NCBI RefSeq assembly: GCF_001194135.2
Contig: NC_068991.1
Span: 32,088,181 to 32,131,481, forward strand
Reading direction: 5' to 3'
Length of the DNA: 43,301 bases
Source: Octopus bimaculoides
Taxonomy: Eukaryota
Part shown: piece after piece, positions 4,745 through 31,268 of the stretch
Layout of the letters: every line of letters begins with the position of its first letter
Position numbering within the stretch: the stretch's first letter is position 1
Position numbers and translations under genes: made by a program
Notes under the pieces: generated by a model
Told to the model about the DNA's origin: nothing
The model's input: the letters and a program-made list of their open reading frames with translations, nothing else
The model's database searches: none

Positions 4745-4900
4745 AGTCATAATATACAGCATCTTCAAAGAGATCCTCATCATAATCCTCGCCATCAATT
4801 TGCTCCTCTAAGTAATGCTCTAACTCCCCTCGTAAACCTCTGTACAATTCTCTGCGTAAATCATCGTTTAAACACTTTTCTAACTCCTCCTCCTCCAGAA
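4745..4900 (-). CDS. Internal coding exon (156 nt, phase 1-1) of an uncharacterised gene: xLEEEELEKCLNDDLRRELYRGLRGELEHYLEEQIDGEDYDEDLFEDAVYYD
   Basis: Acceptor cttcattttaccccttaag|TT, donor GACT|gtaagt, length divisible by 3, open frame, and a protein-like acidic/helical sequence in a locally GC-richer island. Confidence 0.8.
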
Positions 4901-6092
4901 CTTAAGGGGTAAAATGAAGAATGAGGGAGAAAGATGAAACAATGAGGTTGTGGAATGTAATCAGAACAATGATGGTGGATGGGAAATAAAATGAAAGGAT
5001 GTTAATAGTAGTTTATTCCTTTCAAGTCATATTAATGGCAGTTGCCCCTTGCAAGTGGTATTTAAAAGCATCATATGTAGAGTAATAAATAGTCTTTCTA
5101 AATTCTGGGTGACTTTTAATAGTCAATGCTTACTCAGTGCTAGTTGAAAGGTATTCAGTAGTTGATAGATAAAAAATCTTATTCCTGAAGAAGGCACTAG
5201 TCTATTGCATAGATAACATAATTACAGTCTGTTCTCAACAGCCACAACTGTTGAAGAATAAAGTGTTGAGATATCTGCAGTAATTTCAAACTGATAATCT
5301 TAGAACAGGTAATCCAATACCTTACCCTCCTTGACCATTTTTGGTTGGATTTTAAGGAAACAGGTTCAGGGCTCACTTCAAGATTTGAGTCACAAAAGAA
5401 TAATAAAGAGGTAGAGTTAATTAGATACTAAACAGGATTAAGAGAGAACACACATACACAAGAAATTAAGATAAACAACAAGTTTATAATATTAGTTCCT
5501 ACATATGTTTCACCATTATGGTTGTTTGGAATCATTCATTGGGTGTTCCAAGAGAATTTGGGTGCTTAACCAGAATGGATCATCAGGGAATACTTTATTG
5601 CATTAAGTTTTCTCTGTAACCCAATGCAGGGTTCTAAACAACAATAATGGCAAAATTGTTTATCTTAATTTCTCCTACATTTGCTATTTCATAACTAGTA
5701 ATACTATTCAGTATAGGAGTTACTTAACCACTATACTGAAAACAGACTGGAATACGATAATCTACAAGGAGCACTAAACTTTTCTCACTGTATTGTGTGT
5801 TTGTTTCTTCTTTGCATCTGTTATTTTATTATTGGTCTCTTATATAAATGAAGACATATTCTTTAGTTTGCTGCTTATCTTGACATGAAATGAGAAGATA
5901 CATAGTGGAACTGTTATTTTAACGAGTTATATCTATTTATCACCCGAAGAGATACATCTGTACTGTCAGATGCTCCTGAACCAGTTATTAAGTATCCCAC
6001 TTGTGAGGGATCGATGCTAGATGAGTTGAAACAATTGTAGTGATGAATAAAAATTCATGCATCTTCCATTCACTATATATATATATATATAT

Positions 6093-6124
6093 NNNNNNNN
6101 NNNNNNNNNNNNNNNNNNNNNNNN
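6093..6124. other. Assembly gap (N run) after (TA)n
   Basis: 32 N. Confidence 1.
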
Positions 6125-6130
6125 TATATA

Positions 6131-6990
6131 CAAGGGGATACCCAAAAGAAACCAGAATTTTGCAATATTATTTTATCCACTTAGTTTTACATGTTTACAC
6201 TTTTATCGTCTTCAAAATATTCTCCATTTGAAGCAATGCATCGGTCCAGACACATTTTCCATTGTTCAAAGCTGTGCTGGAATTCTTGCAAAGTGATGCT
6301 TTTTAATGCCTCTGTCGTTTCTTCTTCATCTCTTCCACATCTGCAAATTCTGTAGCACCAGCTTTCATCACGAGTGATGACCTTCAGAAAAAGGTCCAGA
6401 TCAATTTCCAACTGTTCTTTCAGTTCACGACACACATTCAGTCATGACTTTTGACCTACTGTGAACAAACGAGGCACAAATTTTCCTGCAACTCTTTTCA
6501 TTCGCAATTCCTTGCTCAAAATTCGTTGGCAGGAGCTCCAGGACACACTAGTCATATCAAAAAGTTTGTCAATTATCCAAGATCAGTTCATGAATTTTCA
6601 TGATATTTCCATTCATTCGGGAGGTCAACAGATGCCCTGAACAAAGTTGGTTTTCAAGTGACAAGTGACCATTCCTAAAGAATGAAAACAACTTGTAAAC
6701 TTGTGTTTTGCTTATGGCAGCATCCTTGTAAGCTGTTTGTAGCATGTCAACTGTTTTAGCTGCCGTTTTCCCCAGCAAAAAACAGAATTTCATGGAAGCA
6801 TGCTTTTCCTTTGTTTCAGCCATCACAAAAATTGATGAACAAAGACACATTATGTGGCAGTACAATTGCAACTGTGGTTGGCAGATTGATGCTAGAGGGT
6901 TGCATCAAGTAGCTTTTAGCAATGAAAGACTGAACTACAATGGGCTTGTCCCACAGAGAACATTTCCAGTTGCTTTTGGGTACCTCCTCG
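6131..6990 (-). mobile_element. Internally deleted mariner transposon, 860 bp, with both TIRs and TA target duplications
   Basis: Left TA|CAAGGGGATACCCAAAAGAAACCAGAA; right, reverse-complemented, TA|CGAGGAGGTACCCAAAAGCAACTGGAA. The minus strand encodes a mariner N-terminus (KFCFLLGKTAAKTVDMLQTAYKDAAISKTQVY), the first-Asp motif VITRDESW and the C-terminal EFQHSFEQWKMCLDRCIASNGEYFE. Confidence 0.92.
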
Positions 6991-7039
6991 TATATACACA
7001 AACACACACAGATGTCTATATTCCATTTGCCAGCATGGG

Positions 7040-7235
7040 TTCCTCTTAAATAGTTGTTAAATATATTAGAAACAGCAGCTAAATATCCCTTTCATCTTAA
7101 TAAAAAAAGACACATTGGACAATGTAATCCAAATACACAATATCTGAAATAAATGATGGATCGGTTAAAGCTTGAACAGTTTTGATCAAAGATCTGCTTG
7201 ATCAAGGCTGGCCTGGGGTTAAATAAGACCAGCAC
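7040..7235 (+). repeat. Dispersed repeat (SINE-associated 3' module); other decayed copies near 4110-4270(+), 8590-8790(-), 9650-9860(+), 14500-14690(-), 25960-26170(+), 37680-37830(-), 39440-39690(+), 39780-40000(-)
   Basis: Recurrent motifs tagaaa-agca-ccaaat-tc-ctcaaatcac, gacacattgga-aatgta, ttgatcata-gtct, ctgacctgggg-taaacaacaac. Confidence 0.6.
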
Positions 7236-29904: not shown

Positions 29905-30710
29905 CAATAATAATAATAATCGTTTTTACTATAGGCCTGAAATTTCGAGAGAGGGGGTCAATTGATTAACCTGAATGCTAAAGTGGTACATATTTCATCA
30001 ATCCCAAAAGGATGAAAGGCAAAGTCAACTTCAGCGGCATTTGAACTCAGAACAAAAAGATGGATAAAATGCCGCTAAGCATTCTGCCTAGTGTGCTAAT
30101 GATTCTGCCAGCTTGTTGCAATAACAACAACAGCAACAACAACAACAATAATAATAATAGCAATAATAATAATAATAATAATAATAATGATGATAGATGT
30201 TTCTGATTTAGGTACAAAACCAACAAACTTGAGGGAAGGAGTTAGTCAATGTCATCAACCCAGTATTTAACTGGTACCTTATTGAGCCTGGAAGGATGGA
30301 AGGCAATTAAAGGGAGAATAAGTTTATAATCATCAAGAAACTGTAGAAACTGAAAGTGAAGGTTGGGGAGGAATGAAAGAAACAGTTTTTTTCTAGAATA
30401 TTCAAAGAAATACATTAATAAAAACTTTGAAAAATAATTATAAAGCATTCTCATTTTCATTTATGGGTATTGAAATTAATTGATTCACTGATTGCAATTA
30501 TACAAGAATTTCTAAAGGTGACAAAGGGTTACAGAAATTGTGGGTAGTCAGACGGCTGACCACTTTATTTTGCAGGTTTTCATAAAAACCTACCACAAAG
30601 ATGAAAGGCAAAGTCCACTCCAGCAGGAATTGAGCTCAGAATATAAAGTAAGAGACATGAGTAAACACCACATACCATTTTGACCACTGCTCTACCAATT
30701 CTGCCAAATT
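29905..30710 (-). mobile_element. Three tRNA-related SINE copies or fragments (about 29905-30115, 30200-30305, 30555-30710) with (AAT)n/(CAA)n spacers
   Basis: ggatgaaaggcaaagtc-act-cagc-ggcatttgaactcagaa motifs. Confidence 0.75.
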
Positions 30711-30940
30711 ATGATTAATAATATAAACATTATATACAACTTCATAATTAAAGATACAATTTTTTTAAAATGTTTACACCTACATTCTTGGATATGTACT
30801 AGAGAACCATCCTAAATTTGAACAAATACTGCCATCCCTGGGATGACATGTAAATATAGAGAAAAGGATTATTACTTTTAGCTTAACAAAAAAATTTCCT
30901 CATGTAAATCTAATTTGCCGCCATATGCACATGAGGGAAT

Positions 30941-30950
30941 ATGATGACGA

Positions 30951-30984
<34 letters not shown>

Positions 30985-30996
30985 GGTGGTGGTGGT
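30941..30996. repeat. (GAT)n-(GGT)n compound microsatellite
   Basis: Direct reading. Confidence 0.95.
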
Positions 30997-31168
30997 GTAG
31001 TGGTTAGGGGTAAAATTAATTAGAAATGATAATGTAAACATTTAAATAAAACAAATATGAGATTAATAAAGAGTTTGATAAGCTCTCAACTTATTAACAC
31101 CAAGTTATCTCACATATTTCAACATTCTTCAATGTGTGATGTCATATTGAGAATGAAGCAATGCCTAC

Positions 31169-31268
31169 CTTGCATTGGTTTCCATGCACATTTTATATCT
31201 ATATCCACCACACGGGCAAGATGACATTCTGCAACTTGCACATTGGGTTGCTCTGCAACAGACTCCAT
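31169..31268 (-). CDS. Probable first coding exon of the minus-strand gene: MESVAEQPNVQVAECHLARVVDIDIKCAWKPMQ, ending in phase 1
   Basis: ATG in AAAATGG context with an in-frame TAA upstream, 33 open codons plus 1 nt, donor CAAG|gtaggc, GC-richer than its flanks, and phase-compatible with the downstream exons. Confidence 0.6.

What the first reader, a model, noticed from the sequence alone, without database searches (positions are those of the whole stretch)
4745..31268. Unrecognised minus-strand gene built from frame-neutral phase-1 microexons
Seen: an ATG exon ending in phase 1 and exons of 48, 33 and 156 nt (weaker candidates of 75, 36 and 24 nt), each with AG/GT boundaries, length divisible by 3 and an open phase-1 frame. 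The four best exons join without a stop into 112 aa: MESVAEQPNVQVAECHLARVVDIDIKCAWKPMQ-EQEPEVSVKDLHGYRL-KITYEESYLSA-VLEEEELEKCLNDDLRRELYRGLRGELEHYLEEQIDGEDYDEDLFEDAVYYD. Adding the 75- and 36-nt exons also stays open. None of this appears in the ORF track. Established: symmetric same-phase exons can be skipped in any combination, as with neural and muscle microexons. Inference: this is a lineage-specific small acidic protein, or the alternatively spliced N-terminus of a larger gene continuing left of the window. I do not recognise the protein.
Basis: partly seen in the sequence, partly recalled or inferred. Interest (0 to 1): 0.7.

Follow-up and report, generated by a model that had tools for sequence, protein, structure and literature searches.

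The report
Two N-terminal exons of octopus reticulon
Two of the proposed minus-strand exons (48 nt and 156 nt) are real, spliced, protein-coding pieces of a larger gene, most likely a reticulon (an ER-shaping membrane protein). The proposed start exon, the 33-nt exon and the 112-aa "small protein" have no RNA support, so this is an ordinary gene fragment.

Summary
The four "best" exons are in the sequence exactly as described, and the 112-aa translation reproduces.

RNA evidence sorts the candidates:
- **Supported:** spliced transcript contigs from four closely related species bound the 156-nt exon exactly at 4745..4900. They join it directly to the 48-nt exon 20014..20061.
- **Not supported:** the 33-nt exon (9242..9274) and the ATG exon (31169..31268) have zero RNA depth.

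Exon 20014..20061 is spliced upstream to a different exon that is not in the window. Exon 4745..4900 is spliced downstream to an exon left of the window.

The downstream exon begins F|LDLIYWRDV. That is the signature start of the reticulon homology domain, seen in 118 of 120 reticulon hits. The junction sits at the same position and phase (phase 1, residue -5) at which insect reticulon isoforms diverge.

Best reading: these are symmetric, acidic exons of the non-conserved N-terminal region of an octopus reticulon gene, probably used as cassettes. Interest is low.

The parts
4745..4900 (-). 156-nt coding exon, phase 1 to phase 1. It encodes (I)LEEEELEKCLNDDLRRELYRGLRGELEHYLEEQIDGEDYDEDLFEDAVYYD(F): a predicted helix followed by an acidic tail.
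   Evidence: Raw RNA-seq depth is confined to the exon, with clipped reads. Spliced contigs from four species end exactly at 4745 and 4900. The donor is a perfect GTAAGT and the pyrimidine tract is 80%, ranking 2 of 906. AF2 predicts a helix at residues 3-33 with pLDDT 87-95. An organism-B genomic-like contig shows 1 substitution in the exon against 26 in 784 nt of flanks, and all indels are in the flanks.
20014..20061 (-). 48-nt coding exon, phase 1 to phase 1, encoding (E)QEPEVSVKDLHGYRL.
   Evidence: The loose ends of the 156-nt-exon contigs in X9 and X11 are the last 24-29 nt of this exon. An X9 contig of depth 51 covers exactly this exon. The donor is a perfect GTAAGT and the pyrimidine tract is 90%, ranking 1 of 906.
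4901..20013 (-). Intron removed between the two verified exons (GT..AG on the minus strand). It contains assembly gap 6093-6124, a Mos1-type transposase remnant and the unsupported 33-nt candidate.
   Evidence: Junction 20014>4900 is seen in spliced contigs of organisms A and C. Splice dinucleotides were checked. HTH_48 hit.
1..4744 (-). First part of the intron downstream of the 156-nt exon. The next exon (TCTTGGATCTCATCTACTGGAGAGATGTCA..., encoding LDLIYWRDV) lies left of the window.
   Evidence: Loose end before 4745 in X9, X12 and X14. The sequence is absent from the window. tblastn finds no reticulon-domain exon in the window.
20062..43301 (-). Last part of the intron upstream of the 48-nt exon. 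The upstream exon (...GGACCATGGCTAAAAAAGATAGATCCAAAAG) is not in the read letters. It may lie in gap 28146-29052 or right of the window.
   Evidence: Loose end behind 20063 in X9. The sequence is absent from the window.
9242..9274 (-).
   Evidence: Zero depth in X22-24 raw reads and in X9, X11, X12 and X14 contigs. The observed junction skips it. Splice score rank is 227 of 906.
31169..31268 (-).
   Evidence: Zero depth in X9, X11, X14 and X22. The 48-nt exon has a different upstream partner. There are 87 such ATG..GT segments in the window.

Best explanation
The window is mostly intron of a large minus-strand gene whose ends lie outside it. Two exons of that gene are in the window, 20014-20061 (48 nt) and 4745-4900 (156 nt).

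**Gene identity (inferred).** The gene is most likely the octopus reticulon (RTN/RTNL) gene. The exon after 4745 begins the reticulon homology domain (F|LDLIYWRDV). That domain is the membrane-hairpin module that anchors the protein in the endoplasmic reticulum and bends its tubules.

**What the two exons encode.** They encode part of the cytosolic N-terminal extension in front of that domain. This is a 68-residue, strongly acidic segment (pI 4.1): one predicted long helix followed by a disordered D/E/Y-rich tail.

**How they probably behave (inferred).** Both exons start and end in phase 1, so each can be included or skipped without changing the frame of the domain. They are probably cassette exons that tune what the reticulon N-terminus binds, as N-terminal variants do in other reticulons.

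**Shown versus inferred.**
- Shown: exon boundaries, the junction between the two exons, the sequences of both outside partners, and the single open frame.
- Inferred: reticulon identity (10 residues plus intron position and phase), cassette behaviour (contig break points), and the function of the acidic segment.
For: **Exons and junctions.**
- Raw RNA-seq covers only 4743-4904, and 7 of 9 reads are clipped.
- Spliced contigs in four species bound the exon at 4745/4900. Their loose ends equal the 3' end of exon 20014-20061, plus a downstream 30-mer.
- An X9 contig covers 20014-20061 with a 31-nt upstream partner.

**Coding frame.**
- Only frame 0 is open over the 265-nt spliced piece; the other two frames have 8-9 stops.
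- Only 11 of 20000 shuffles are open.

**Reticulon identity.**
- The peptide continues as FLDLIYWRDV.
- A search with a reticulon homology domain returned 1437 proteins. All 120 listed carry PF02453, and 118 of them begin the domain with h-x-x-L-[IV]-Y-W-R-D-[VP], including FESLIYWRDV and VADLIYWRDP.
- In seven same-species pairs of insect reticulon isoforms, the N-termini diverge exactly at residue -5/-4 before YWRD. Residue -5 is V, L, M, F or I, all xTx codons, which is what a phase-1 intron gives.
- The octopus junction is T|TC = F at residue -5, so position and phase are the same.

**Fit with what is known of reticulons.**
- The N-terminal peptide has no homologue and no Pfam family above threshold.
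- Reviews state that reticulon N-termini are not conserved and have no recognised domains, and that the genes use alternative promoters and splicing (PMC3918113; PMC8125174).

**Cassette behaviour.** Contigs break 29-31 nt into neighbouring exons and 1 nt past exon 20014-20061. That is the de Bruijn-graph signature of exons shared by several partners.
Against: - The reticulon domain itself was not seen. Only its first 10 residues are known, from a 30-nt loose end, and Pfam cannot score that.
- No cephalopod reticulon protein was retrieved for comparison (one search failed; searches exhausted).
- No protein in the databases contains the exon peptide. So it could not be shown that any annotated reticulon isoform carries it.
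- Alternative splicing is inferred from where contigs end. No skipping junction was read.
- Conservation of the exon over its flanks is only suggestive (1/156 against 26/784, p = 0.07), because the four species are very close.
- The start codon and the true N-terminus are unknown.
Confidence: 0.75

Rival explanations
1. The two real exons belong to a larger gene that is not a reticulon, and the LIYWRDV match at the start of the next exon is a coincidence.
For: Only 10 residues of the next exon are known. Pfam gives no reticulon hit on the 88-aa piece. No cephalopod reticulon was obtained for direct comparison.
Against: From residue frequencies, I estimate the pattern h-x-x-L-[IV]-Y-W-R-D-[VP] to occur about once in 10^9 positions. 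It is present in 118 of 120 reticulons, exactly at the domain start. It also sits at the same exon junction, in the same phase, where insect reticulon isoforms diverge.
Confidence: 0.12
2. One reading: a self-contained, lineage-specific small acidic protein of about 112 aa. It would start at the ATG at 31268 and be assembled from the four microexons.
For: The four segments join into an open 112-aa frame. The peptide has no homologue.
Against: The ATG exon and the 33-nt exon have zero RNA depth in runs that express the gene. Exon 20014-20061 is joined to another upstream exon whose frame is open with no ATG in frame. The last exon ends at a used GTAAGT donor and continues in frame into another exon. 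Segments like the ATG exon occur 87 times in the window.
Confidence: 0.03
3. The two exons are transcribed and spliced but not translated (5' UTR or non-coding isoform), and the open frame is fortuitous.
For: The start codon was not found. The upstream exon carries an out-of-frame ATG in a strong context (ACCATGG), which would give a 12-codon ORF ending inside exon 20014-20061.
Against: An 88-codon open frame across three junctions is rare by chance (11 of 20000 shuffles). The frame runs straight into the conserved domain signature. Both exons are symmetric in the phase that the domain exon needs. The only substitution seen in the exon in organism B is a conservative L to I.
Confidence: 0.05

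Closest known systems
Reticulon family (vertebrate RTN1-4 including Nogo; non-chordate RTNL such as Drosophila Rtnl1; Pfam PF02453)
   Same: - The first residues of the next exon match the domain start.
- The exon junction is at the same residue and phase as the point where insect isoforms diverge.
- The N-terminal region has no detectable homologue or domain.
- Several upstream exons appear to converge on the common domain exon (PMC3918113; PMC8125174).
   Different: - The domain itself lies outside the window and was not seen.
- This N-terminal segment (an acidic helix plus a D/E/Y tail) resembles no known reticulon N-terminus.
- Vertebrate Nogo-A/B N-termini are described as proline-rich and unstructured (PMC3918113), whereas here a confident 31-residue helix is predicted.
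Frame-preserving neural/muscle microexon programmes
   Same: The 48-nt exon is short, symmetric (phase 1-1), flanked by very large introns, and probably optional.
   Different: - Tissue-specific inclusion was not tested, because run identities are coded and no junctions were counted.
- No TGC motif is present in the 25 nt before the acceptor (ttatccttcttctcactctgttcag).
- The 156-nt exon is not a microexon.
Long RTN3 isoform, whose N-terminal extension carries LC3-interacting motifs and acts as an ER-phagy receptor (PMC5517149, listed; known function taken from its abstract)
   Same: A reticulon whose isoform-specific N-terminal extension would supply the specific function. Here the segment is acidic and rich in aromatic residues.
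   Different: Only bare [WFY]xx[LIV] cores were found by pattern. The acidic-context ones (YDFL, FLDL) overlap the domain start itself. No binding evidence exists, so this is a lead only.

Membership tests
Reticulon (RTN/RTNL, PF02453) | Complete C-terminal reticulon homology domain: two long hydrophobic hairpin segments flanking a loop of about 66 residues | not testable with these tools
   The domain exons are outside the window. tblastn with five reticulon domains finds nothing in the window. Only 30 nt of the next exon are known.
Reticulon (RTN/RTNL, PF02453) | Signature at the start of the domain: hydrophobic-x-x-L-[IV]-Y-W-R-D-[VPI] | tested here: met
   The octopus transcript reads F-L-D-L-I-Y-W-R-D-V. 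118 of 120 PF02453 proteins carry the pattern at the domain start.
Reticulon (RTN/RTNL, PF02453) | Alternative N-terminal exons join the common domain exon through a phase-1 intron in the codon of residue -5 before YWRD | tested here: met
   Seven same-species insect isoform pairs diverge at residue -5/-4, and residue -5 is always an xTx codon. The octopus junction is T|TC at residue -5.
Reticulon (RTN/RTNL, PF02453) | N-terminal region not conserved and without recognised domains | tested here: met
   No hit in 5.8 billion proteins. No hit in 1.84 billion representatives. No Pfam family above threshold. The property is stated in PMC3918113.
Reticulon (RTN/RTNL, PF02453) | Several isoforms from alternative promoters or splicing that converge on the domain exons | tested here: inconclusive
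   Contigs break 22-30 nt into the domain exon, 29-31 nt into other neighbouring exons and 1 nt past exon 20014-20061. This fits shared exons, but no alternative junction was read.
Tissue-regulated frame-preserving microexons | Very short symmetric exon (about 51 nt or less) that preserves the frame | tested here: met
   20014-20061 is 48 nt, phase 1-1. 4745-4900 is 156 nt, so symmetric but not a microexon.
Tissue-regulated frame-preserving microexons | Tissue-specific (neural or muscle) inclusion | not tested
No inclusion ratios were measured.
Tissue-regulated frame-preserving microexons | UGC-type enhancer motif just upstream of the acceptor (from my own knowledge of the SRRM4/eMIC programme) | tested here: not met
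   No TGC in the 25 nt before the acceptor of 20014-20061 (sequence).

The most novel reading that the evidence does not exclude
The 48-nt and 156-nt exons could be cephalopod-specific cassette exons. They would add a new acidic helix-plus-tail module to the reticulon N-terminus, included in a tissue-specific (for example neural) way. That would give octopus ER-shaping protein isoforms a lineage-specific binding surface absent from current protein databases.
Probability: 0.3. Interest if true: 0.3.

Novelty: new member of a known kind. Interest (0 to 1): 0.15.

Why it matters
The biological stakes are small. Reticulons are known to have fast-evolving, alternatively spliced N-termini, and this looks like one more example.

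It is useful for annotation. It fixes two exon boundaries and one junction with RNA evidence, removes two false exons and a false start codon, and shows that the gene runs off both ends of the window.

It also gives a practical lesson for the scan. 'AG/GT + multiple of 3 + open phase' is met hundreds of times by chance in AT-rich cephalopod introns. A perfect GTAAGT donor plus a strong pyrimidine tract picked out exactly the two real exons.

Tried and rejected
**Homology searches**
- The 112-aa peptide found nothing in the word-indexed database.
- The 51-aa exon peptide found nothing with full HMMER against 1.84 billion representatives.
- Pfam on the 88-aa spliced piece gave only a sub-threshold UCMA hit.
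- Attempts to pull out cephalopod reticulons with a short query built around FLDLIYWRDV failed: the E-value limit, the minimum length, then no candidate sharing three indexed words.

**Read laying**
- Two calls were lost to the sequence filter. The search for alternative first exons in 1-2625 was therefore not done.
- The wide call on 4500-9400 was dominated by CA/TA microsatellite noise. It was useful only for depth.

**Searches for the partner exons**
- Neither the upstream nor the downstream partner exon is in the window.
- tblastn found no reticulon-domain exon in the window.
- A scan for ATG exons in 1-4744 with strong donors gave only weak candidates.

**Motifs and literature**
- An FFAT-like reading of EDLFEDAV was considered and rejected: it does not align with EFFDAxE without an insertion, and position 5 is not small.
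- The LIR-like cores are pattern matches only.
- A literature search for reticulon plus cephalopod found nothing.
- The Genome Biology reticulon review could not be fetched under the id I recalled.
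Full report
**Observation.** The expected AG and GT dinucleotides are present, and the lengths are 100, 48, 33 and 156 nt. Joined, they give the stated 112-aa open translation. The window is AT-rich (35% G+C), full of microsatellites, and has four assembly gaps.

- Between 4745 and 31268 the minus strand holds 890 segments that are AG..GT bounded, 24-160 nt long, divisible by 3 and open in phase 1. 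Block-shuffled sequence gives 615 +/- 49.
- ATG-started open segments of 100 nt or more that end in phase 1 at a GT occur 87 times on the minus strand of the window, against 37 in shuffles.
- A crude splice-site score does separate the candidates. With a perfect GTAAGT donor and 80-90% pyrimidines before the acceptor, 20014-20061 ranks 1st and 4745-4900 ranks 2nd of 906. The 33-nt candidate ranks 227th.

**RNA evidence for the two real exons.**
- Public runs of four closely related species (coded organisms A-D) hold the 156-nt exon.
- In a raw RNA-seq run of organism A, depth is confined to 4743-4904 and 7 of 9 reads are clipped at the edges.
- Spliced contigs from four runs (organisms A, B, C, D) end exactly at 4745 and/or 4900.
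- In X9 and X11 the loose end beyond 4900 is the reverse complement of TGTGAAGGATCTACACGGTTACAGACTTA. That is the last 29 nt of exon 20014-20061.
- In X9, X12 and X14 the loose end beyond 4745 is a 22-30-nt sequence, TCTTGGATCTCATCTACTGGAGAGATGTCA on the transcript strand.
- So junction 20014>4900 is read directly in organisms A and C, and it skips the 33-nt candidate.

**RNA evidence against the other two candidates.**
- The 33-nt exon has zero depth in three raw runs and in four contig runs.
- An X9 contig of depth 51 covers 20014-20061 and continues upstream into ...GGACCATGGCTAAAAAAGATAGATCCAAAAG.
- The ATG exon itself has zero depth in X9, X11, X14 and raw run X22.
- The RNA-type runs that hold the ATG exon's words hold 78-100% of a 201-nt query. 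The exon alone could give at most about 41%, so these runs hold unspliced or genomic sequence.
- Neither outside partner sequence occurs in the window.

**Gaps.** Gap 6093-6124 lies inside the intron that the observed junction removes. Its unknown length therefore does not matter for the frame, and the junction shows that the two sides are collinear. Gap 28146-29052 lies upstream of the 48-nt exon. The true upstream exon could be hidden there or lie beyond the right end of the window.

**Coding frame.** The 265-nt spliced piece is made of the upstream 31 nt, the 48-nt exon, the 156-nt exon and the downstream 30 nt.
The other frames have 8-9 stops.
- Only 11 of 20000 shuffles are open.
- There is no in-frame ATG in the known upstream piece, so the start lies further upstream.
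- An out-of-frame ATG in a strong context (ACCATGG) would give a 12-codon ORF that stops inside the 48-nt exon.
- A genomic-like contig of organism B has one substitution in the exon (L to I), against 26 substitutions and all five indels in 784 nt of flanks (p = 0.07).

**What gene is it?** I recognised FLDLIYWRDV as the start of the reticulon homology domain and then tested that.
- A search with a reticulon domain returned 1437 proteins. All 120 listed carry PF02453.
- 118 of those 120 begin the domain with hydrophobic-x-x-L-[IV]-Y-W-R-D-[VP], for example FESLIYWRDV and VADLIYWRDP.
- In seven pairs of isoforms from the same insect species, the N-termini diverge exactly at residue -5/-4 before YWRD.
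- Residue -5 is V, L, M, F or I. All are codons with T in the second position, as expected if a phase-1 intron splits that codon.
- The octopus junction is T|TC (F) at residue -5, the same place and phase.
- The N-terminal peptide has no homologue and no Pfam family above threshold. This is what reviews describe for reticulon N-termini: not conserved, no recognised domains, many isoforms from alternative promoters and splicing (PMC3918113; PMC8125174).
- The domain itself is outside the window and could not be read. Identity therefore rests on ten residues plus intron position and phase.
- I put the reticulon identity alone at about 0.8 and the whole best explanation at 0.75.

**How it probably works.**
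- The two exons encode 68 residues with pI 4.1 (25 D+E, 7 K+R).
- AlphaFold on the 51-aa exon peptide gives one helix over residues 3-33 (pLDDT 87-95), then a low-confidence acidic, tyrosine-rich tail.
- In a reticulon this segment would lie in the cytosol directly in front of the first membrane hairpin.
- Both exons are phase 1-1, so including or skipping them keeps the domain in frame.
- The contigs break 29-31 nt into neighbouring exons and 1 nt after the 48-nt exon. That is the pattern a de Bruijn assembler gives when an exon has several partners. No skipping junction was read, so cassette use is an inference.

**Verdict.** The start exon, the 33-nt exon and the 112-aa small protein are not supported. 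The gene is most likely an ordinary reticulon with a lineage-specific N-terminal segment. Interest is low.

Noticed in passing
window 6569-6871 (-), surrounding 6140-6960: The ORF has a Mos1-type transposase HTH domain (PF17906, E = 4.9e-07), so it is a mariner-like element remnant inside the intron. The surrounding stretch has very high contig depth in an organism-B run (up to about 518), as expected for a multi-copy expressed repeat.
   Followed up: partly
window 42505-42894 (+); also 22000-26000: The ORF at 42505-42894 has a sub-threshold zf-RVT hit (PF13966, E = 2e-04), suggesting a retroelement remnant. The 22-26 kb stretch has raised G+C (0.40-0.42 against 0.35), and its + strand ORFs (22921-23208, 23781-24191) look like reverse-transcriptase fragments by eye but gave no Pfam hit at E <= 0.01.
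   Followed up: partly
window 9747-9783: A segment of about 35 nt is matched, with 0-3 mismatches, by many different transcript contigs (up to 1.9 kb long, summed depth about 55-200) in all four species. It is probably a short dispersed repeat carried in many mRNAs.
   Followed up: no
window 31504-31700: Eight reads of raw run X22, all with the first mate on the + strand, pile up here. Six are only partly aligned. The sequence is T-rich and low in complexity, and the cause is unexplained.
   Followed up: no
window 31343-31403: One 924-nt contig of organism D (depth 758) matches 31343-31361 on one strand and 31377-31403 on the other. A small inverted pair is therefore shared with an abundant RNA.
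   Followed up: no
upstream exon, not in the window (loose end at 20063): The exon spliced to 20061 contains ACCATGG out of frame with the coding frame. This gives a possible 12-codon upstream ORF (MAKKDRSKRTRA*) that ends inside exon 20014-20061.
   Followed up: partly
window 20153-20196 and 20087-20141: A/T-rich low-complexity stretches just upstream of the 48-nt exon's acceptor attract 31-mers at enormous depth (up to about 44,000 in X9). This is noise that can mask small exons in read-laying.
   Followed up: no
window 4414-4465 and 1593-1633: These two stretches trip the read-laying filter, and each cost a call.
   Followed up: no
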